DNA from: Vitrella brassicaformis CCMP3155
Lineage: Eukaryota; Protista; Chromerida
Assembly (NCBI GenBank): GCA_001179505.1
Contig: CDMY01000368.1
Location: 1 to 64,000 of the forward strand
Direction of reading: 5' to 3'
Length of the DNA: 64,000 nt
Below, in pieces: positions 33,111 through 43,281 of this stretch. Position 1 is the first letter of the stretch. Each line of letters opens with the position of its first letter. The notes beneath the pieces were generated by a model. It did not search any database. It had not been told where the DNA came from and saw only the letters and a list, made by a program, of their open reading frames with translations. The position numbers and the translations under genes are program-made.

Positions 33111-36100
33111 ATGAAGGGTGACGTGAGGTTTCACCTGAAGCTCCTCTTTGCTTCCCTCGTCACGCTGGGCTTCGTCGCATATGCAGCCGTCCTCGCCGGC
33201 TTCTTCTTTGTCATACAAAACGAGGTACAGTACGTCAGATGCATCAGCACTTGCACTAAGGAACACATGACTGAACCATTTGGTTGTCTGTGGTTGTCTG
33301 TTGTGTCTGTCTGTGCAGGTGATCAGGGAGTCCGAGACGGCCCTGGAGAAGCAGATGGAATCGTCGAGTGACTGGGTCCTGGGCGAGGCACTGCTCAGCT
33401 TCTCCAGCGAGATTGAGCAGGGCGTGAGAGGGCTGCTGCAGCCATCTATGAGGGCGATACAGGAGAATTTCCGGGCGGGCAGCCTCTCATTTGGGCCTAC
33501 GCAGCCATATGCTGACCACTTGTCTACGAAGATAGAAGGATTGACAGAGTACTCTCTGCCGCGTTGTCATTCCCTTCTCTCAGGGTTGCTGATCTGCGGC
33601 CGCCTCTGTCAGGTGTCAACGACTTCGACGACCCCTGGCTGCCTCCCAGAAGGCACCAGGATGCCACCATCTCGCTCGGTGTGTGAATCACAAACGAATG
33701 GATATGCATATCCGCATCAGTAGGTGACGGCGTGTGCCACTGCAGGTGCCGCGAGCATATATTTCCACGGCTATCGGAAGGACGGGAGCAACGTATACAG
33801 CATCCTGTCGGGCAACAGCTTCATCGTGAGCCGCACCTGGGCCATCGACCTGCTGGCCCGGGTGCCCTGGGAGGCACACCCTCTCTTCCTCGACGCATAC
33901 GTCGCCACAGATCAGGACATGATCAGGTAGGTGCAGGCCAGTATTACACACAGGCACAGCGCTGTGGTTTCTTGATGGCTGACTGACTCACTCTCTTTCT
34001 CTTTCTCTTTTTCCACGACCGGTCAGGAAATATCCCGGTCGATACGACACATGGACGGGTTGATTGCCTCCTGTCAAGTACATCTGGTTGTGTGTACAGG
34101 CATCTCGACGTTGGCGGACGACAAGTGTCGGTCGGGGTGTGAGTGCGATTGGGAGCGGTGCTATATCCCCACCAGCCGCCCATGGTATGTATACATGCAT
34201 GCGTCTGTCTGCCTGCGGTCTCTCTGTGTGTACTGGCCTGTGACAGAGGAAGCAGTGTATGTGTGCTGGCTGGGGCAGGTATACTACGGCCAGGAGCGGC
34301 CAAGGGACGGTGCAGCACACTAATCCCTACAACGAAACCTTTTCGAAGACCTGGATGATCACGTTAAACCAAGGCATGCGCTAACTAACTCACGGACCCG
34401 GCATATCGACACATGGTATGAGTGCAGGCTTCTATCAGCTCGGCTCCTTTCCGTCGCTCTATCCAGAGTTCATAGGCGTGGCCGCCAGCCACATGTACAT
34501 CGCCTCGCTCAAGTCGCTCGTCGAGAAGATCAAAGCCCGCGGAGGTGAAGCCCATCTGTACAACCTCCCCCTCTACAATATAGGTATGTCTCCGTCTCCG
34601 TCTCCGCCTCTGTCTCAGCCCACATGTGCATACACCCCTCAGCCTTTCTCCCTGCTCCCCAGGTAATTCTGGCGCCTATGTGGAAGGCGGCTACGTGATC
34701 GCGTCGCCACAATTCGCTCTCGACCGCCCAACGCCTCTGCGCGTCACCGATCTCTCCTTCGAAGGCAGCTCGTTCCAGATCCAGCCTTCGTCTGACCTGC
34801 TGCAGGCCGAGCACTGGGAAAGCAGCACCAGGGGCACATCTGGACTGATCAAGGACAGCAACAAGGAGGTGTTCATCTTCTACAAGAAACCTGGGAGAGA
34901 GTCGATGGGGTACGGCGAGACGAGCGACGGAACTTCGTGGAGCGGTGTGAACGGACGTTACGGCATGATGCTGGCCATCCCTGCCAACGCCCTCTATGAC
35001 CCCATCGACGGGCAGAAAGAAGACATCCTCAGCTCTGTCTTGATTATCTACTTCGTGTCGCTCATCGTGGCGATTGTGTTCTGTGTTGGGATCGTGTTGC
35101 TGTACATCCCACTGGCCAAGCGGATTGCTGTGCCGCTGGAGTACGTGGCCAATGAGGCAGAGAAGATCACCAACAACCTGGGCGGAGACCTCTTCAGGCA
35201 AGAAAGAAGAATAGAGACATGCAGAGGAACACACACATAAGGTCGGCCACATTGTGACCAAATGGTGTGCAGGGGTGTGAATTTGTCTGAGGCCGTAGAT
35301 GCGTCCTTTACGGTTCTGGAGGTCACAGTGCTCAGGGGCCGCTTCAGACACATGCTCATGCTGATCAAACAGAAAAGACAACAGGTGGGTGCGAAGAGAC
35401 GCGCCAACGGAACACATGTGAACGTGTCTCTCTCTGTTTTGTTTAGGCGCAGCACGGCCCCACGACCCTGCCAAATGCCTTCATCTATCATGGCGGCAAG
35501 TACCCATGGATGGCGGCCTCTAGTGCTGGCGACAGCGCAGAGACAGCGGCCGACAAATACTACCCCGACCAACTTCTCGTAAGTAAGCACATGACCTCCA
35601 TTGACACGCTGTCTTTCTCATTTCCACACACTCGAGTGTGTGTGAGTGCAGCGTCTGGAGCATCTCATGTCTGAAGCCCAGCAGAAGTCCGCTCCCCCAC
35701 CGTATGCGGCGGCTGGTGGGCCGACGGTCATCACGATCCAGGAGGGCGGCGGGCAGACATCCATCGCCGTCACACAACAGCAACATGCACAACCACCAGC
35801 CACAGCACCACCACCGCCCTCAGCACAGCAGCAGCCAGCTGTCCAACAGGGCAAGGCCCAGGCAACGGGATTCGTGACTGACGCCGGGCAAAGCTCTTTG
35901 TGTGTGCAGGTGTGCCCCAGGGCAATGTGGTGGCGCCTTCAGCGCCCGATGCTCCTGCTGCTGACGTCCAATCACCATCGGTCCCCTTTTATGCAGGCAT
36001 CAGGCGCCACTGGTGGAAAAGGATGTGGGTGCAGGTCTGCAGACACACGGAGAGGGACACGGCTGGCATGTTGCGGTCGGCTTTGCTTGATCGGATTCCT

Positions 36101-39100
36101 TTAGTTGGTGTTATTCTTGGCGCTCCCACTGCTGGTAGTCGGCGTGTGCATCGCGGTAATAGGCTTCCTCTGGTATCAGACTACTGCTCTCTCGTGGATC
36201 GACCCGCTCAAGTAACCAACCCTACACACCTGCGAGGCGTCTGGTGAGTACGAAGGCATTGTTATCTTGGTGTGTGTGTGTCAGGTCGGTGATGATAGAC
36301 GAGACGGTCAAGACGCTGGAGGGAATCACGGAGGACAGGGCCCAGTCCACCGCCAACATGATCAACGTGGCCGTTGGCGCCCTCCTGCAGACAAAACTGT
36401 CCAGTAAGCCCACTCACACCAACACAAACATACAAGTTTGTCTGTCTCCCTTTCTACCTGTCTGTCTATGTGCCCGTCTGCCCTATATATAGGTGAGAGG
36501 TTTTTGTCGGAAAACACAATCAACGAAACCGACTTCAGTGTGACGCTGGGCACCGACCTTATGGTAAGCTACCTGTCAGGTGTGACGTCCTACATCGAAC
36601 CCAAGGCCTACTACCCAACCCCATACACTGGCAACACCAGGCTGCGCATACTGTCAGGCACGTTCCAAGAATGGATAGAATCGACATCCCCATGGATACA
36701 TATCTGTCTCTGTCTCTCTGTCCCTTCGTGCATGTATCATCAGCCGGCAGCATGAGCACGTCCGGTTCCAGGTTGACCAACTCTGCCGGTGGTACAGTGC
36801 CCGCCTACACCGACAGCAGTGTGGTCTTCTTCCGGTCGCAGCCGTTCCCCCTCCATCCCATCATCGACTGGCGGATCGACATTACCTCACACATGGACAC
36901 CATCTTCAAGAGCATCTACCACTCCGCGCCTATCAATGCTGTCTTCCTGGCGCTACAGGCCACCACGGCCGCCCCCCTCCAGCTGTTCCGATATTACCCG
37001 TATTACGACACTTTTCAAGGATTGGCTGATCGGTCAATGACGTGTTATGATGGGTCGCAAGAGAACGGCTACCGGCCGGAGTGTTTCTCCTGGTACAGAC
37101 GGGCGGTTGCATCCTCCGGGCAGGTGGTGTTCAATCCGGCTGAATACGACCAAATACAGCAACAGCAAAGCGTAAGCTCAACGACCAGACCGCACACACC
37201 CACGACGAGAGGGAGGACAACACCGTCTGTCGTGTCAGGTGATATTGTCGGCGAGCATCCATCATTGAGACACAGCAGAGCTGCTGGGTGTGGTGGGCGT
37301 GTCCCTCGACATCGCCGAGCTCGAGGACCGCTGGAGCAAAGAGGACATGAAGTACTTTGACAGCACCAAGAGGTACCCCTTCCTCCTCGACGACAGCAAC
37401 AACGCCCTCATCCACCCTGACTCACAATTCACCCGCAAGATCGCAAACACATCCTCCCTCAGCCAGCTAGAGCCCTCTGTGCCATCCTCTGTGCTGACAT
37501 CGCTATCTAATGCCGAGATGCGCACCACCAAAGTCACCAAAGGCGGCGAGAGATGGTATGTGAGCTATCTCCGACTGGAGATGACCGTGGCCAGCAGTGT
37601 GGTGGGGACGGCCAGCAGGTGGGCGTGCTGCTGTACGTATCAGATCTATCTGGCATGAGAGTTGAGGCTATCTATATGCTGTCTGTATGCGACGCAGGAT
37701 CGACGTGAGCACCAACACGGGCAAGAGGCGGAGCTACACGCCGTATAGGATCGGGTGGATGGTGAAGGAGCAGCTGATGAGCCAGGAGGCCGACGACCTC
37801 TCTGACAGCCTGTTGGCTCTCCTGCGGCGGATGCTGACGATGGCCATGATTGTGTGCATTGTGGTGGCGCTGCTGATCGGCGTCATCGCCACACTCGCCG
37901 CCCTCCTCTTCGTCGCCCCGATTGTTCGGCTGGGCGACTACATGCACACGGCAGAGGACAATAACTACACGCAAGACCTCGCCCCATACCAACAAAACAG
38001 CCTTTTCATGGTCGGTCAATGAGTCGATTCCCCGATGGAATGAGCTCCCCTCCCGATGATTCCCTCTCTGCGTGTGTATGATGTCTCTCAGGTGCATGAA
38101 TTTGCCCGCCTGTTGTCGACCGTCGAGGATCTGATAGTGGCGCTGCGGTTCGGCAACCAGCAGTGGTCCAAGGGGTCTGCGAGCAAGGATTTGGCCAACT
38201 ACCAGAGGGCTATGAGGATCGTGCAGCGGACCGGCAACATGAGGGGCCAGGGGGTGTGCCACGACAACCTGGCCCTGACACTGATACGGACGCAGGACCA
38301 CAAAGACCCCCAGAGCGGCAAGACGGCCCTCGAGCTCATGAATGAGGCGCTGCAGTTCGCGTACCAGCACATCATTGTAAGTAACCACAGACACAGAGGT
38401 CGCCAGGCATCTATCTGCGTGTGGGGGGGTTTTCGTTCAATGAGCAGCACACCCAGCAGGAGGGTGACCACAGCAGCCACATCGACGCGCTTGACAGTCA
38501 GGGCAAGCGGCTGCTGGGCAAAGCCAGGATACTGATGTCCACGGGCAAACAAGACAGCATCAAGGAGGCCATGCAATGCGCCGAGCAGGCCATCGACAAA
38601 TTCGTGGAGACGGGACATATCCACCACGTCGTAAGCCACGCAGCCCCACCAACCAGCGGACAAGAGAGAGGTTTTCATGACAGGGTGTACGTGTTTGATC
38701 AGTCAGATGCGTTAGACCTCTTTCGGTCGGACATTGAGAGTCTGGCTGCGGTCACTGTAAGCGGCGATTGGCATCCGCTGCGTTCGCTGCAGCCGCTGCT
38801 GCAGCGAGTCATGCTCCTAATCGACACACACCTACAAGTAGGAGCAAGACTGAAGAGAGACACACATGAATGGTGTTTTCCTTTGCTTTCTGTGCGTGTG
38901 TGCAGAAAGCCGCCCCCGGGTGTGTGTCTCCGACAAATGTGTCGGGCCTGTGGGAGCTGGTCGCTGACGCCGCCCTCACGTACCGTACTGCACGCACACA
39001 GCCAGCCACGCCGACGTGCAACAAATGTGTGTGTTGACGTGGGTGCAGGCTGTGTGCGGTGGAGTGGTTTCTGTATCTGAATGGCATGGCGGCTGAGGAG

Positions 39101-40771
39101 GGACAGACACCGGAATGCCTCAAATACGTATGCTGGTCAGTCCGTCGACACAGATAAAGGGAGGGGAAGGAGAGAGACATCCCTGCCCATCTCCCTCTCT
39201 CTCTCTCCCTCTCTCTCTGTGTGTCAGGATTGTTGCCCGCTGTCCTGTGCTGAAGCTGACGACTTTGCTAGAGACCTCTGCTGCTCTCAAGGCACTATAC
39301 CAACCACTCTGTATGCAATGGGCGGAAGCAGCCCAGCCCATTTGCAGTCACATGGATACGGACATGCCTTTCTGTCACCTGACCTGCCAGGCCCCACTGA
39401 CGGTTCGTGGCACCGGACAAGTGAGGACATCGACACATTCGTCGACTCGGGCATCGCACTGGTCAAACAAAGGTAAGCAGGGGGGTACGTAGCTCCCTCC
39501 CTCCCTCCCTCTTCCTCTCCCTCTCCTCTCTGCGCAGACAGACACATGCTTACATACACACACAGACATTCATGGATATATGTCGCAATTGGTATGCCGT
39601 GTGCAGGGGTGGGGCTTTCGTCGAGCAAGCAGGCGTCAGGGAGCAGGCGAGGAAAGACCTCTCCACCTGGAAGTATGGGCCGTACACACTGCAGATCACC
39701 AAGCACCGGCCGCCACCCAGCATCGACACCAGCAGCGGGGGGGATCTCAGGGGCGCCCTCAGTCGCCTCTCGGCTGCCGATCGCACGAGGTGCATCGAGT
39801 GGGTTTGGGGATTCTACCGCGAGAGCGTCCGGGGGCCGGCAAAGGACATCATCTTTGTGCTGGACAAGAGCGGAAGTATGGCTGGCGCACGGGTAAGTCA
39901 GCCGTGTGGGAGTACAGACGGAGAAGCCGTCTCGTGTGCTTGGGGTGTGTGTGTGTGTGATAGGTGCGTGTGTGTCTGGAGTCCATGTGCAAGATCCTGA
40001 GGGACTTCCTACAGCCCTCAGATCGATTTGCTTTCTACTGGTTTAACACAAGGTGGGCAGAAGAGACACAGCATGAAGGACGGCCCGGCCCCTGCATGTC
40101 TCGGTCAACCAATGTGCTATAATAACATACCTCCACCCACCAGGGTGCAGCAGCTGAGGGCCCTCAGCTCCCGTGGGGATTCCACTGCCTGTGCCGCCGA
40201 GTGTGAGCGCATCACAAACGAAAACAGATGTGGAGGCGGCACCGCTTTCTTCGACGCCATCCTCCAGTCAGTCACACACACGAAGGGAAAGAGCCGCTAT
40301 GGAATGAATGCATGTTGTTCATGTGTGTCTTGGCCGTGTGTGTGGTGCAGGGGTTTGCATGAGGCCAGCAGCAGTGAGGAGGCGGCGAGGCGTGATCAGT
40401 GGGTGATAGCTCTGACAGATGGGGGCGACAACAGCAGCCGTAGCAGCAGTGTGGGCGAGGCGTGTAGCTTGTTGCGGACACACAAGGGGCTGCACCTTAT
40501 TATCATTACTGTCGGCAAGGAGTACAGCAAAGACAAAGTAAGAGCGGGAGGAGGGAGGACACACACCACACCACACACACATAAGAAAGAGCCAGCTGGA
40601 CGGTGTTGTCTGTCTGTGTGTCTCACGAGACAGAACGAGATGGTGCTCAAGGCAGCGAGGGACAACGGCTCTCACGGGGTGCATGTGAGTGCTGATGACA
40701 CAGGGCAGCTGCACGACGCCTTCAAGCGGGTGGAGCAGCTCATCGAACAGGCCAACATTGAGTATCTGTGA
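33111..40771 (+). CDS. Receptor-like 4-TM protein: TM-dCache-TM-HAMP-like, P/Q/A linker, TM-dCache-TM-HAMP-like, TPR-like helices, C-terminal VWA; apparent in-frame TGA at 37266-37268
   Basis: TM1 LKLLFASLVTLGFVAYAAVLAGFFFVI; Cache1 YIPTSRPW|YTTARSGQGTVQHTNPY..MITL..FIGVAASHM; TM2 VLIIYFVSLIVAIVFCVGIVLLYIPLAKRIAVPLEYVANEAEKI..EVTVLRGRFRHML; TM3 LVLFLALPLLVVGVCIAVIGFLWY; Cache2 LFRYYP..YRPECFSWYRRA..LLGVVGVSLDI..YPFLLDDSNNALIHP; TM4 MAMIVCIVVALLIGVIATLAALLFVAPIVRLGDYM..EFARLLSTVEDL; NYQRAMRIV..GQGVCHDNLAL; VWA IIFVLDKSGSM..GGTAFFDAI..VIALTDGGDN..LIIITVG. Confidence 0.8.
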
Positions 40772-41010
40772 TTCACTGATGGGCTGTTGTTGCATGCATA
40801 CCCGGAGGCACACATGCATTGATTGCATTTGTCATCATCAACGAGTCAGTCCATTAATCATAGGATCAAAAATCAATCCACACGTACGGACACTCTATCC
40901 TCACACACACACACACAGACAGACACAAACTGCCGGCCCCGGACTGACTGTACAGAAGGCCGGCAAACAGACCATCTCTCCACCCACATCGACACACCAC
41001 ACCCACCCCC

Positions 41011-43281
41011 TCACGCCCTCAGCTCTTTCTCCCTCTCTTTCAACACTGTCGGCAGCACGTCAAACCCATTGGGCTTGTCAATGCCAAGCACCTCCAGTGG
41101 CTGACCACCATACTGCTCCGAGCGGAGCGCTTCATTCGCAGACGCCTCTCTGTCGATGGCTTCGTCGTCATACGGCACCACACCATCGGGTGTGAGTGCC
41201 CTCAGCAAATCCACCCCGCCCCCAAAGACAGCCGACTTGACCAGCGCCGCCCGCACAGCGTTGTTGAGCTTGGTGAAGAAGCTCAGCGAGAAGGCGATGC
41301 GCCGTGTCCAGGTCTCGTGCTGGTCGTTATGCGGAAGGCCGGGCCATCCGGCCAGGAACCCCGCCCACATTGGCAGCTCGAGGTTGAAGAAGCCCCGGAA
41401 GAATGCCCGCAGGTTGTGCACGTTCTGCTGCATCAGGAACTCCCCACCGAACACAGTGAACTCCCGCTGACGCCTGAACTGCGCGGGCCACAGAGCGGCG
41501 TAGGCTGTGCGGGCGGCACGGTCGGGGGCAAACACGCCGTCGATCGGCTGACGGATCTGCACACACACACACGCACACACGGACAGAGGGATTGACCTCT
41601 GTTTTCGTCTGGCTGCAACCAAACACACACACACACACATACAAACGCACCTCTTTGGCGATAGCCTCGGCTGTTGGCGCCACTCCCGACATCATTCGGC
41701 AGATCATGTAGCCTGTGGCCGCATGCACCACCCCTGCCGCACCACCAAATGCTATCACCTGAGTGAGCCCAGCCCAACCACACGCGAACACCCCCCACAC
41801 GACCACATGGGCAGTTCGTGTCTGTGGGTCAGGCCTGTAAGTCATCTAGATACCCACCCGTTGGTTTCGTTTGGGTATGGCGCCCCCCATGGGAATGTAG
41901 CAAAACTCCTCCTCCTCAATCTTCTGCGGCTCGACACCTGAGTGAGCCACAGGCACCCGTCACGAGCCTGTGCTTGTCTGTCGGCCATGGGTACAGGTGC
42001 CTATCCCGGCTCACCGAGGTATGCGAGTCTCTTCTTGAATCTCTCTTTGCATTCGTCAAAGGACATGGGCGGCCGCGCCACGAGTGAGGTCTCCTCCAGA
42101 AAAATGCGGCGCAGACCGCTGGCCGACTCGCCGAACGGCATCACATCTGGCAGACACGCAAGCCATGTCGGTGTGAGCTGAAGCTCCGTGTGCCTGTAGT
42201 GACTGCATTATCTGCTCACAGAGGAAAGTGGGTTCCCTGACGGCCTTGTCAAGGTCGGTCTGCATGGTGGGCTCTCCCTTCTGCGCCTCAGTGATGTAGT
42301 CGGTCCGGTAGTCCATGAAGAGCATCGCCCCCTCGTCAAATGGGTGCCGCTCACACTCACACATGATGCCATAGGCGATCTGGAAACCAGGGTCGTGCCT
42401 CCCGTCCCGCTCAATCAGCTTCGACTCGTGGCCAGTGCAGTCCACAATCAGCTTGGTCCGCAGTTCGGTGCTTCTGCCGTCCTGGAGCCGCACAGAGCTG
42501 CCAGTGTCGTCGTGCCGCACAGATGAGGGGTCGATAGCAGTGTCAAGCATGACCACTCCGGCTTGCTGTGCGTGTGCGCGGAGTCGCTGCTGCAGCTTGA
42601 TGCGATTGACGCGGGCGTATGGCCTGTGGATGCGGAGGGGTGTGGTGCCGCCAGGGTCGAGAAAGAGGTCAGTCTTCTCCCACCGATGGTCCAGACACTC
42701 ATCCACACCCAACTGAGTCAAACATGCCAGGCAGGACACACACGGAGAACGGAAGATGTACGGGGGCCACCGCGAAATGTCGTGGTCAGTCACTACGTGA
42801 CACACACCTGCAGCTGTCTTTCCACGGCTTCCCACTCGGCCACCCACACGCCGTAGTTGTTGGGCCACCTCTCGTGTATCCTCGGGTCAATCATCACCAC
42901 ACGCAGGCCGTACCTCTTGGCCAGCACGGCACCCATGGCAGTCCCAGCCGGACCAGCACCCACAATCAGCACGTCCGTGTCCATCGACAGAGGAGTTGCG
43001 TCGACAGACGCATCGGCCTCGTTCGCTGTGGCCGAGAGAGCGGACAAAGGCGACGATGTGGGACTCAGTGAGTGCCTCCTGATGCCATCCAGCCGCCTCC
43101 GGAACCGGTGATCTGGTGATGGTGTGGCACGCTGAACATCCTTGCGGCTGGCAGAGGGAAGGCGAAGGGATGCGGCATAGTGGGAAGGCGCGATGAAGAG
43201 AGATGTTGCAGATGCGACAGCCATTCTTATGCACGCCATGAACGCTGCAAAACGCCAGATCTGCCGGCCCTCTGCCGCCAT
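41011..43281 (-). CDS. lcyB: Lycopene cyclase (CrtL/LCY family, most likely beta-cyclase), plastid-targeted
   Basis: DVLIVGAGPAGTAM (FAD-binding), WPNNYGVW, HRPYARVNR, LIVDCTGH, FQIAYGI, MLFMDYR, PTFLYAMP, IFLEETSLVARP, EEEEFCYIPMGG, GGAAGVVHAATGYM. Presequence ..MAVASATSLFIAP followed by a Ser/Arg-rich transit peptide. Confidence 0.93.

What the first reader, a model, noticed from the sequence alone, without database searches (positions are those of the whole stretch)
33111..40771. Eukaryotic receptor built from two bacterial-style Cache-HAMP sensor modules with a TPR-VWA output
Predicted topology is two extracellular dCache domains, each between TM pairs and each followed by a HAMP-like helix pair, which is the chemoreceptor/histidine-kinase input architecture. 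There is no kinase, cyclase or MCP output. Instead the cytoplasmic tail has TPR-like helices and a VWA with an intact MIDAS (DKSGS, T of GGTA, D of TDG). In alpha2delta/CACHD1 the VWA is extracellular, inside the Cache, so this is a different arrangement. The modules join in phase 0 (DQLL|RLEHLM, 35579/35651), supporting one gene. This is the best candidate in the window for an uncharacterised signalling system: a dual-ligand sensor signalling through protein-protein interaction. Similar single-module proteins may exist in ciliates (recollection, unverified).
Basis: partly seen in the sequence, partly recalled or inferred. Interest (0 to 1): 0.75.

Follow-up and report, generated by a model that had tools for sequence, protein, structure and literature searches.

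The report
Fused two-sensor receptor gene, interrupted
The alga Vitrella brassicaformis carries a gene that joins two bacterial-style outside sensors to an inside protein-docking tail; it belongs to an undescribed receptor family found in protists and giant viruses, usually as two neighbouring genes, but this copy has a stop codon in the middle and an unspliced intron in its assembled transcripts.

Summary
Window 33111-40771 (+) is a 30-exon gene of Vitrella brassicaformis CCMP3155. Read conceptually, it encodes 1,780 residues: TM-dCache-TM-HAMP, a linker, then TM-dCache-TM-HAMP-TPR-VWA with an intact MIDAS. The 35579-35651 intron is real and phase 0.

The reading frame is not intact.
- An in-frame TGA (37266-37268) sits in a loop of the second Cache. 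It is present in the spliced RNA contigs of two runs.
- Joining the two halves needs a 70-nt intron (36035-36104, containing a TAG). Both RNA contigs retain it.
- The public annotation is a 931-aa protein that ends at the TGA.

The two modules are different subunit types.
- A is TM-dCache-TM-HAMP. B is TM-dCache-TM-HAMP-TPR-VWA.
- A and B are adjacent separate genes in 13 of 17 metagenome or giant-virus loci with enough flank.
- They are fused A-B in Durusdinium and in an uninterrupted 1,719-aa metagenomic ORF collinear with Vitrella.
- In a tree, first modules group with A and second modules with B.

Most likely this is an A/B heterodimer-type receptor fused into one chain, signalling through the cytoplasmic TPR-VWA. 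The Vitrella copy is probably recently disabled, or would need splicing plus readthrough. I found no paper describing the family.

The parts
33111..40771 (+). Conceptual CDS of 30 exons (1,780 codons plus stop, with one internal TGA). Exons: 33111-33224, 33319-33521, 33584-33678, 33746-33900, 34027-34184, 34279-34373, 34428-34583, 34663-35197, 35273-35384, 35447-35578, 35652-35850, 35910-36034, 36105-36211, 36285-36403, 36493-36657, 36744-37171, 37239-37618, 37698-38010, 38092-38376, 38448-38630, 38703-38837, 38906-38979, 39049-39135, 39228-39310, 39391-39472, 39607-39892, 39964-40052, 40144-40266, 40351-40537, 40634-40771
   Evidence: Introns from 36212 onward come from spliced RNA contigs of runs X6 and X7. 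Those at 35198-35909, 39136-39227 and 39893-39963 are deduced from contig record lengths. With the exon 4/5 variant of the annotation, these exons reproduce the annotated protein P0001 exactly. Exons upstream of 34790 have no read evidence here.
33144..33218 (+). TM1
   Evidence: Hydropathy peak of 2.34; N-terminal flank is basic.
33219..35027 (+). Ectodomain 1, A-type dCache (genomic span including introns)
   Evidence: Family HMM 34.1 bits against at most 2.4 for shuffles. AF2 plus Foldseek: top hits are PctA, CtaA and PctD ligand-binding domains. Falls in the A clade of the tree.
34027..34184 (+). Exon missing from the public annotation; it encodes the Cache core motif YIPTSRPW(Y)
   Evidence: Including it raises the local HMM domain score from 8.6 to 22.4 bits. 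It also fills a gap opposite a conserved segment in the A-type alignment. Its 5' boundary (intron 33901-34026) is inferred from frame and splice signals only.
35028..35105 (+). TM2
   Evidence: Hydropathy peak of 3.08. Aligns with TM2 of Durusdinium module 1.
35106..35366 (+). HAMP 1 (includes intron 35198-35272)
   Evidence: hhalign of the A-type juxtamembrane alignment against 30 bacterial HAMPs: 94.4%, P 8.9e-8, 58 columns. Vitrella alone: 52%, score 23.8 against at most 14 for shuffles.
35367..36031 (+). Cytoplasmic Q/P/A-rich linker between HAMP 1 and TM3
   Evidence: Translation. Collinear with the linker of the fused ORF in L124.
35579..35651 (+).
   Evidence: Sequence. Fits the 445-nt record constraint. 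Used in the annotated protein.
36035..36104 (+). Predicted 70-nt intron that must be removed to join A to B in frame. It contains the TAG at 36102-36104 and is retained in both RNA contigs.
   Evidence: X6 record 3 and X7 record 4 are contiguous over 35909-36211 and 35909-36184. Frames. The annotated protein P0001 splices it.
36032..36173 (+). TM3 (spans the predicted intron)
   Evidence: Hydropathy peak of 3.14; four basic residues just before it.
36174..37836 (+). Ectodomain 2, B-type dCache
   Evidence: Exon-level Pfam dCache_1 E 0.0069. Family HMM 66.7 bits. End-to-end match to the B-type HMM, 242.5 bits. Falls in the B clade.
37266..37268 (+). In-frame TGA in a loop of Cache 2
   Evidence: Sequence. 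It lies inside exon 37239-37618, which both RNA contigs cover with no differing letters. Homology continues on both sides. The annotated protein ends here.
37837..37917 (+). TM4
   Evidence: Hydropathy peak of 3.08.
37918..38175 (+). HAMP 2, running into the conserved RFGN motif (38143-38157)
   Evidence: hhalign of the B-type juxtamembrane alignment (including Vitrella) against bacterial HAMPs: 96.8%, P 2.6e-10; controls at most 6.5%. Weak Pfam HAMP hits on relatives.
38176..39811 (+). TPR / helical repeat region
   Evidence: Exon-level TPR_12 E 0.035. Aligns to the family TPR region. Relatives score TPR_12 down to 1e-18.
39824..40753 (+). VWA domain with MIDAS: DKSGS 39863-39877, T in GGTAF 40235-40249, D in LTDGGDN 40412-40432
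   Evidence: HMM domain 104.9 bits. 18 of the 20 family-invariant residues from D804 onward are kept. The family VWA matches alpha2delta, ITIH and integrin I domains in the PDB.
40772..41633 (+). 3' UTR, about 862 nt
   Evidence: Remaining length of X6 record 3. No SECIS or other Rfam match of note.

Best explanation
The locus is one gene of the 'A-B fusion' form of a two-subunit transmembrane receptor family.

Architecture:
- Subunit type A is TM-dCache-TM-HAMP.
- Subunit type B is TM-dCache-TM-HAMP-TPR-VWA.
- In Vitrella they are joined head to tail by a cytoplasmic linker. Both Cache domains face outward and both HAMPs and the TPR-VWA tail lie in the cytoplasm.

Inferred mechanism:
- The A and B halves pair as bacterial dCache-HAMP receptors do in dimers. 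In the fusion this pairing is within one chain.
- Ligand binding at a Cache pocket is passed through the TM helices to a mixed HAMP bundle.
- The second HAMP helix runs directly into the first TPR helix (RFGN motif). The signal would therefore change how the TPR-VWA tail, through its metal-ion site (MIDAS), holds or releases a cytosolic partner.

State of this copy: the frame is broken by a TGA in Cache 2, and the assembled transcripts keep the A-B joining intron. Most likely the full-length protein is not made, or is made only from a minor isoform. This looks like a recently disabled allele, because the tail downstream of the TGA still has nearly all family-invariant residues.

Shown: domains, topology logic, homology, A/B adjacency and fusions, TGA and intron retention in RNA contigs.
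Inferred: heterodimer pairing, signal path, partner binding, pseudogene status.
For: Identity:
- The annotated 931-aa protein of V. brassicaformis CCMP3155 matches the window at 100%.

Domains:
- Relatives pass Pfam thresholds for dCache_1 (to 4e-20), TPR_12 (to 1e-18) and VWA (to 6e-18).
- The family profile hits PctA, Mlp37 and alpha2delta Cache domains and alpha2delta/integrin VWA domains in the PDB.

One gene:
- X6 contig record 3 (6,476 nt) spans 34790 to beyond 40785.
- There is collinear similarity to Durusdinium P0005, module 1 to module 1 and module 2 to module 2.
- There is collinear similarity to the uninterrupted 1,719-aa ORF of L124, which has four TMs in the same places.

A/B pairing:
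- Separate A and B genes are adjacent in two giant-virus MAGs.
- They are adjacent in 13 of 17 metagenomic loci with at least 1.6 kb of flank. Gaps are 3-1160 nt, in both orders and orientations.
- The tree puts all A genes plus the three first modules in one clade (97/86) and all B genes plus the three second modules in another (97/94). The sub-topologies of the two clades mirror each other.

Recent event:
- 804 codons remain open after the TGA, across 13 introns.
- 31 of 50 family invariants are kept, including the whole MIDAS.

No other copy was found in the genome.
Against: - Logan contigs show presence, not absence, so a spliced isoform for 36035-36104 may exist. The annotators chose that intron.
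- The TGA could be read through.
- The heterodimer idea rests on gene neighbourhood, fusions and analogy with bacterial receptors. No interaction was tested.
- Neither Vitrella Cache pocket has the complete amino-acid-binding motif. Module 1 has 4 of 5 positions and module 2 has 2 of 5, by my alignment, using the motif defined in PMC8915833. The ligand is therefore unknown.
- The fusion-protein modules sit on long branches in the tree.
- Exons upstream of 34790 and the added exon 34027-34184 lack read support.
- The module-1 AF2 model has mean pLDDT 62. It was built with bacterial dCache rows in the alignment, which favours that fold.
Confidence: 0.6

Rival explanations
1. The gene is functional as one full-length receptor. 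The 70-nt intron is spliced in a share of the transcripts, and the UGA is read through or recoded, giving the 1,780-residue protein.
For: - The intron has ordinary signals and size, and removing it restores the frame and removes the TAG.
- The public annotation uses it.
- The region after the TGA is fully open and conserved.
- The transcript is well represented in two RNA runs.
Against: - Both assembled RNA contigs retain the intron.
- No SECIS-like element was found in the 3' UTR.
- I know of no evidence for UGA recoding in chromerid nuclear genes (my own knowledge).
- The TGA sits in a variable Cache loop, not at a site where selenocysteine would make sense.
Confidence: 0.17
2. The locus yields separate products that still work, as in the unfused A + B gene pairs. 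An A-type protein would come from the intron-retaining mRNA (792-aa ORF). A B-part would come from another start: an internal promoter with the ATG at 36023 just before TM3, or the 778-aa ORF after the TGA.
For: - A and B are separate genes in most relatives.
- ORFs of 792, 244 and 778 aa exist in the observed transcript.
- In run X7 the contig upstream of 36184 has depth 5.5 and the one from 36156 onward has 68.8.
Against: - The 792-aa ORF ends in about 99 out-of-frame residues.
- Any B product upstream of the TGA still stops at the TGA.
- The 778-aa ORF lacks TM3 and about 60% of the Cache, so its topology would be wrong.
- A contig's depth is one mean figure and 3' bias could explain the difference. 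The tool itself warns against ranking parts of a gene by it.
Confidence: 0.13
3. The stop codon and frame problem are errors of the assembly, and the gene is simply intact.
For: Draft assembly of 1,064 contigs.
Against: RNA contigs from two runs of two studies agree with the window letter for letter over the laid stretch, including the TGA exon and the retained intron (tables 3, 4 and 8).
Confidence: 0.03

Closest known systems
Bacterial dCache_1-HAMP transmembrane receptors (chemoreceptors PctA, CtaA, Mlp24/37; sensor kinases)
   Same: TM - long stalk helix - double PDC ectodomain - TM - HAMP. The family profile hits PctA at 1.7e-16. The module-1 model superposes on PctA and CtaA. HAMP is supported by hhalign. 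The Y-x4-R-x-W-Y core is present.
   Different: No MCP signalling, kinase or cyclase domain; the output is TPR-VWA. There are two non-identical sensor units, as paired genes or fused. The hosts are eukaryotes and giant viruses. The name 'methyl-accepting chemotaxis protein TlpB' on the Durusdinium relative is an automatic label; no MCPsignal domain was found.
Animal alpha2delta calcium-channel subunits and CACHD1
   Same: The building blocks are the same: dCache_1 plus a MIDAS VWA. They are the best PDB sequence matches for both the Cache (8.6e-17) and the VWA (7e-13) of the family.
   Different: In alpha2delta and CACHD1 the VWA is inserted inside a Cache and everything is extracellular (PMC8915833). 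Here the Caches are uninterrupted between TM pairs, and the VWA is C-terminal after TM4, HAMP and TPR, so it is predicted to be cytoplasmic. PMC8915833 states that in all eukaryotic dCache_1 proteins it found, the VWA is inserted in a Cache. This family does not fit that statement.
Cache_heme-HAMP (CHH) receptors without enzymatic output (bioRxiv 10.64898/2026.05.25.727664, abstract seen)
   Same: A periplasmic Cache, TM region and cytoplasmic HAMP with no catalytic domain, signalling by HAMP-mediated contact with a partner protein. This resembles the A-type subunit.
   Different: They are bacterial, heme-binding, and their partner is a Ser/Thr kinase. Here the presumed partner is the B subunit with its TPR-VWA tail. 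I read only the abstract.
Uncharacterised database relatives: Durusdinium trenchii 1,634-aa 'MCP TlpB' (P0005), Mimivirus LCMiAC02 VWFA protein A0A481Z1U7 (P0004), giant-virus MAG genes (L006, L007), TARA protein P0003
   Same: Same family. The B-type architecture aligns end to end. P0005 is the same A-B fusion, with four TMs at matching positions.
   Different: Identity is only about 20-30%. The Vitrella copy has longer ectodomain insertions, altered pocket residues in Cache 2 and a premature stop.

Membership tests
dCache_1 (Pfam PF02743) | Match to the Pfam model above its gathering score (45 bits) | tested here: inconclusive
   Only single exons and the annotated P0001 could be scanned. 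The best result is 16.4 bits, E 0.0069, on exon 37269-37655. P0001 gives nothing. Relatives pass: 65.2, 72.7 and 53.1 bits. The joined model was not scanned because it has no reference.
dCache_1 (Pfam PF02743) | Homology of both ectodomains to bona fide dCache_1 proteins, and a double-PDC fold between two TM helices | tested here: met
   Family HMM: 66.7 bits (module 2) and 34.1 bits (module 1), against at most 2.4 for shuffles. The family profile hits PctA, Mlp37 and alpha2delta. Foldseek on the module-1 model returns dCache ligand-binding domains only (pLDDT 62, and the alignment contained bacterial dCache rows). TM pairs.
dCache_1AA (amino-acid-binding subclass, PMC8915833) | Motif Y121, R126, W128, Y144, D173 (PctA numbering) | tested here: not met
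   Module 1 has Y, R, W, Y but H at the D position. Module 2 has F for R, E for Y144 and S for D (motif). Most unfused B-type relatives keep Y, R, W, Y (invariant) and mostly D.
HAMP (Pfam PF00672) | Pfam model above its gathering score (25 bits) | tested here: not met
   No hit on the Vitrella pieces. Relatives score 16.5 bits (E 0.011) and 14 bits (E 0.065), at the right place and covering nearly the full model. A profile search of the PDB found nothing.
HAMP (Pfam PF00672) | About 50-residue helix-connector-helix directly after TM2, homologous to bacterial HAMP by profile-profile comparison | tested here: met
   hhalign against 30 bacterial HAMPs cut from dCache chemoreceptors. B-type (with Vitrella module 2): 96.8%, P 2.6e-10, 56 columns. 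A-type (with Vitrella module 1): 94.4%, P 8.9e-8, 58 columns. Other helical stretches and 20 column shuffles score at most 6.5%.
VWA with MIDAS | DxSxS, a downstream T and a downstream D in a Rossmann-like alpha/beta domain | tested here: met
   DKSGS, T of GGTAF and D of LTDGGDN align to the family invariants D804, S806, S808, T871 and D901. HMM domain 104.9 bits. Relatives score VWA down to 5.9e-18. The AF2 model of relative P0003 shows the alternating strand/helix domain.
alpha2delta / CACHD1 | VWA inserted within a dCache_1; whole protein extracellular with one C-terminal anchor | tested here: not met
   The Cache domains are uninterrupted. The VWA follows TM4, HAMP and TPR.
Methyl-accepting chemotaxis proteins | Cytoplasmic MCPsignal domain (PF00015) | tested here: not met
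   Absent from all exon pieces and from relatives P0003, P0004 and P0005. Present in the bacterial comparator P0008.
A/B Cache-HAMP / TPR-VWA receptor family (defined here) | First module groups with A-type genes, second with B-type genes; four TMs; collinear with uninterrupted fusion ORFs | tested here: met
   Tree clades at 97/86 and 97/94. Collinear BLASTP to L124 and Durusdinium. TMs.
A/B Cache-HAMP / TPR-VWA receptor family (defined here) | Physical A-B association and signalling through the TPR-VWA | not testable with these tools
   Inferred from conserved adjacency (13 of 17 loci), three fusion ORFs and mirrored A and B trees.

The most novel reading that the evidence does not exclude
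Protists and giant viruses share an undescribed class of receptor built from two different bacterial-type Cache-HAMP subunits. The subunits would pair through their HAMP domains. Only one of them carries the output, a cytoplasmic TPR-VWA (MIDAS) docking module rather than an enzyme. Myzozoan algae have fused the pair into one chain. In Vitrella, retention or removal of the 70-nt joining intron could switch between an A-only product and the A-B fusion.
Probability: 0.4. Interest if true: 0.75.

Novelty: new variant of a known kind. Interest (0 to 1): 0.62.

Why it matters
Cache-HAMP receptors are the main way bacteria sense the outside world. In eukaryotes, Cache domains are known mainly from alpha2delta and CACHD1, where a VWA sits inside the Cache, outside the cell.

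Here the bacterial layout (TM-Cache-TM-HAMP) is kept whole in eukaryotes and giant viruses. It is wired to a non-enzymatic TPR-VWA tail inside the cell. It comes as a conserved pair of unlike subunits, or as their fusion.

That offers three things:
- a testable case of HAMP signalling between two different chains;
- a possible evolutionary link between bacterial dCache receptors and the alpha2delta Cache+VWA combination;
- a sensing system that giant viruses carry.

The Vitrella copy itself is a warning. Its public annotation is truncated at a stop codon and lacks a conserved exon.

Tried and rejected
- **Pfam on raw open frames** of the region gave almost nothing. Exon fragmentation hides the domains.
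- **A codon-usage dynamic-programming gene model** produced implausible micro-exons in 33927-34278. I replaced it with a frame and splice-site argument plus homology.
- **Selenocysteine at the TGA:** no SECIS or other Rfam match of note in 40700-41900.
- **Skipping the TGA by an alternative acceptor before 37281:** it keeps the frame but has a poor acceptor, would delete a conserved Cache strand, and is not in the contigs.
- **Two independent genes split near 35580:** rejected. One spliced contig spans the site and the intron is phase 0.
- **A promoter or trans-splice site at 36156**, to explain the X7 contig break: no AG, no supporting sequence. Left unexplained.
- **Paralogues in the genome:** exon searches and the B-type profile find only this locus. 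The A-type profile does too, but it contains P0001, so its self-match is by construction. The Durusdinium protein alone finds nothing.
- **Word-index protein searches** with P0001 and with the family alignment added few relatives.
- **A PDB profile search for HAMP** was negative.
With one A-type protein it found only itself.
- **Literature:** four searches found no description of the family. The library is partial.
- It was built only inside scripts from window.fa, for hydropathy, local HMM, hhalign, BLAST and tree work. The database protein P0001 and single exons were used for Pfam and AF2 instead.
- **Read laying** was given 5,996 letters (34790-40785).

Full report
**Source.** The window is contig C368 of a 72.7-Mb, 1,064-contig assembly. 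An exon query returned a 931-aa protein, 100% identical, named 'unnamed protein product [Vitrella brassicaformis CCMP3155]'. The organism is therefore the chromerid alga Vitrella, a free-living relative of apicomplexans.

**Gene model.**
- The single read-laying run covered 34790-40785 (5,996 letters).
- Runs X6 and X7 turned out to hold spliced contigs. X6 record 3 is 6,476 nt. X7 record 5 is 5,308 nt. X7 also has a separate 693-nt contig.
- Fifteen GT/GC..AG introns are listed directly.
- Six more follow from the contigs' record coordinates: 35198-35272, 35385-35446, 35579-35651, 35851-35909, 39136-39227 and 39893-39963.
- With these exons, a script reproduces the annotated protein P0001 exactly. 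That is independent support for the deduced introns.
It lies inside a cytoplasmic linker, not at the critical junction.
- Upstream of 34790 there is no read evidence here. I followed the annotation, with one change.
- The change: the annotated model skips 34027-34184. That exon encodes the Cache core motif YIPTSRPW(Y).
- Including it raises the local family-HMM domain score from 8.6 to 22.4 bits. It also fills a gap opposite a conserved block in A-type relatives.

**The frame is not intact.**
- First, both RNA contigs are contiguous over 35909-36211 (X6) and 35909-36184 (X7).
  - The exonic length between 35195 and 35908 is fixed at 445 nt. The module-1 frame therefore enters this exon in a frame different from that of TM3 and Cache 2. 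The latter frame has a TAG at 36102-36104 immediately before TM3 and no ATG in between.
  - The annotation solves this with a 70-nt intron, 36035-36104, with donor CAG|GTCTGC and acceptor TTTAG|. Removing it shifts the frame correctly and removes the TAG. Neither contig shows it spliced.
  - As observed, the transcript holds ORFs of 792, 244 and 778 aa.
- Second, an in-frame TGA at 37266-37268 lies 27 nt into exon 37239-37618.
  - Both RNA contigs cover it without any differing letter.
  - Homology to the family continues on both sides, so the codon sits in a loop of Cache 2.
  - P0001 ends exactly there.
- No SECIS-like element was found in the roughly 862-nt 3' UTR.
- After the TGA, 804 codons stay open across 13 introns. 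31 of 50 family-invariant residues are kept, including the whole MIDAS. Any inactivation is therefore recent.

**Domains.**
- Four strong hydrophobic segments, with basic residues on the predicted cytoplasmic sides, give this order: N-terminus in, Cache 1 out, TM2, HAMP 1 and a roughly 160-aa linker in, TM3, Cache 2 out, TM4, then HAMP 2, TPR and VWA in.
- Pfam on single exons is weak: dCache_1 E 0.0069 and TPR_12 E 0.035.
- Relatives are clear. P0003 is 985 aa, from TARA and other marine metagenomes. P0004 is 891 aa, from Mimivirus LCMiAC02. P0005 is 1,634 aa, from Durusdinium trenchii. Two giant-virus MAG genes complete the set. All pass Pfam for dCache_1, TPR and VWA.
- An HMM of relatives, built without Vitrella, scores module 2 at 66.7 bits and module 1 at 34.1 bits. 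300 shuffles reach at most 2.4.
- The part from TM3 to the end aligns to the B-type HMM over positions 2-949 of 957, at 242.5 bits.
- The family profile hits PctA, Mlp37, CtaA and alpha2delta-1 for the Cache. It hits alpha2delta, ITIH and integrin I domains for the VWA, and LGN/Pins and consensus TPRs for the repeats.
- An AF2 model of P0001:1-480 has pLDDT 62; the alignment included bacterial dCache rows. It retrieves only dCache ligand-binding domains.
- An AF2 model of relative P0003 has pLDDT 66. It shows the expected order of stalk helix, two alpha/beta modules, TM helix, helical hairpin, TPR helices and an alpha/beta VWA.

**HAMP.**
- Pfam HAMP is below threshold on relatives (E 0.011 and 0.065, at the right place and nearly full length). 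It is absent on Vitrella pieces. A PDB profile search was negative.
- I cut 30 HAMP segments from bacterial dCache chemoreceptors fetched with P0008 and ran hhalign in a script.
- The B-type juxtamembrane alignment, including Vitrella module 2, gives 96.8%, P 2.6e-10, over 56 columns. Five other helical stretches and 20 column shuffles give at most 6.5%.
- The A-type alignment (Vitrella module 1, the L007 A gene, Durusdinium module 1) gives 94.4%, P 8.9e-8. Vitrella module 1 alone gives 52%.
- Both HAMPs are therefore supported.

**The two modules are different subunit types.**
- In giant-virus MAG locus L007, a 503-aa gene (TM-dCache-TM-HAMP) lies 205 nt upstream of the 883-aa Cache-TPR-VWA gene. 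In L006 a 579-aa relative lies divergently, about 170 nt away.
- These 'A-type' proteins resemble Vitrella and Durusdinium module 1 more than module 2. They share a HAMP signature, roughly VPL ... KITNN-G-GDLF-GV.
- A metagenome scan with the B-type alignment was followed by local HMMs for Cache, TPR, VWA and A-type.
  - 26 loci hold a complete B ORF.
  - 17 of these have at least 1.6 kb of flank.
  - 13 have an adjacent A ORF, with gaps of 3-1160 nt, in either order and either orientation. Three of the 13 rows are duplicates: L094 is the L007 contig, L112 is the L006 contig, and L110 repeats L108.
  - Three loci hold uninterrupted A-B fusion ORFs: L124 (1,719 aa), L136 (1,584 aa, runs off the contig) and L103 (1,322 aa).
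- L124 has dCache_1, TPR_12 and VWA by Pfam, and four TMs. It is collinear with the Vitrella conceptual protein through Cache 1, TM2-HAMP1-linker-TM3, TM4-HAMP2-TPR and VWA. Durusdinium P0005 has the same layout.
- In an IQ-TREE analysis of 41 sensor-plus-HAMP regions, all A genes and the three first modules form one clade (97/86). All B genes and the three second modules form another (97/94). The internal topologies of the two clades mirror each other. The fusion modules are long branches, so their exact placement is unsure.

**Reading.**
- The locus is an A-B fusion of a two-subunit receptor.
- By analogy with bacterial dCache-HAMP receptors, which work as dimers with a four-helix HAMP bundle (established knowledge), the conserved adjacency, repeated fusion and co-inherited trees suggest that A and B pair with each other. 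In the fusion the pairing would be within one chain.
- Only B has an output. Its second HAMP helix runs straight into the conserved RFGN motif and the first TPR helix. The tail ends in a VWA with a complete MIDAS. The output is therefore most likely regulated protein docking, not catalysis. This step is inference.
- Most unfused B-types keep the amino-acid-binding motif of PMC8915833: Y, R, W and Y are invariant, and D is mostly kept. Vitrella module 1 keeps 4 of 5 positions and module 2 keeps 2 of 5. The Vitrella ligands are open.

**State of the Vitrella copy.**
- No other A or B locus was found in the genome with these profiles.
- My estimates:
  - about 0.6 that the full-length protein is not made, or barely made (recent nonsense allele or young pseudogene, still transcribed);
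  - about 0.17 that splicing plus readthrough gives a working receptor;
  - about 0.13 that separate products are used;
  - about 0.03 that this is assembly error.
I did not check it.

**Comparison with what is known.**
- The family works like bacterial Cache-HAMP receptors but lacks their outputs.
- It shares its parts with alpha2delta/CACHD1 but not their arrangement.
- PMC8915833 states that in all eukaryotic dCache_1 proteins it found, the VWA is inserted in a Cache. This family is an exception.
- Relatives exist in public databases only under automatic names ('VWFA domain-containing protein', 'Methyl-accepting chemotaxis protein TlpB').
- ESM Atlas clusters of 52-330 members resemble them.
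- Four literature searches found no description.

**Limits.**
- It was used only inside scripts.
- Contigs cannot show absence of a minor isoform.
- The hosts of most metagenomic loci were not determined.

Noticed in passing
window 36156-36184: In run X7 the assembly breaks here. A 693-nt contig of depth 5.5 ends at 36184, and the 5,308-nt contig of depth 68.8 starts at 36156, inside the TM3 codons. The two overlap by 29 nt, as at a graph branch. No AG precedes 36156, and no other contig covers 36105-36155. Cause unknown: 3' bias plus an error tip, or another 5' end.
   Followed up: partly
window 36023-36025: An ATG in the exon just before the predicted intron would give a B-only protein starting four residues before TM3 (M-W-V-Q, then TM3), if an internal transcription start existed and the intron were spliced. 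Unfused B-type proteins also have very short N-termini.
   Followed up: no
window 35198, 35851, 36658: Three of the 21 RNA-supported introns of this gene use GC..AG. One is seen directly in contigs; two are deduced from record lengths and match the annotation. That is a high share for one gene.
   Followed up: no
L007 2398-3909, L006 792-2528, P0005 about residue 585, window about 35480: After the HAMP, A-type units share a short motif, (I/V)NPF(Y). In Vitrella it reads PNAF. NPF motifs are known to bind EH domains of the endocytic machinery (my recollection). This may be a trafficking signal on the A subunit.
   Followed up: no
loci L095-L112: The A and B gene trees have matching sub-topologies. 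For example, L096 groups with (L095,(L097,L102)) in both, and L098 pairs with L099 in both. The pairs are therefore inherited together.
   Followed up: partly
ESM Atlas: One 52-member cluster of 953-aa Cache/TPR/VWA proteins is labelled Archaea, Candidatus Thorarchaeota. This could be mis-binned viral or eukaryotic contigs, or real archaeal members. Not checked.
   Followed up: no
L003-L005 (contigs of P0003): The single-module relative P0003 lies on intron-free marine contigs, next to a eukaryote-type PheRS beta subunit and a phage-type RNA polymerase N-terminal domain. No A-type gene is adjacent. The host is unknown (compact picoeukaryote or giant virus).
   Followed up: no
window 35178-35195 and 37887-37912: Other contigs of X6, X7 and X8 touch these short stretches and run on into unrelated sequence (loose ends). 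They look like chance matches of low-complexity sequence, not alternative joints.
   Followed up: no
window 41115-41175 (-): Weak match to the C/D-box snoRNA family sR14: 15.7 bits against a gathering score of 38, E 0.2. Most likely chance.
   Followed up: no
L100 and P0004: The metagenome contig SDBT01108295.1 encodes a B-type protein whose sensor part (first ~445 residues) is identical to the Mimivirus LCMiAC02 protein P0004 (zero branch lengths). It is probably the same record.
   Followed up: no
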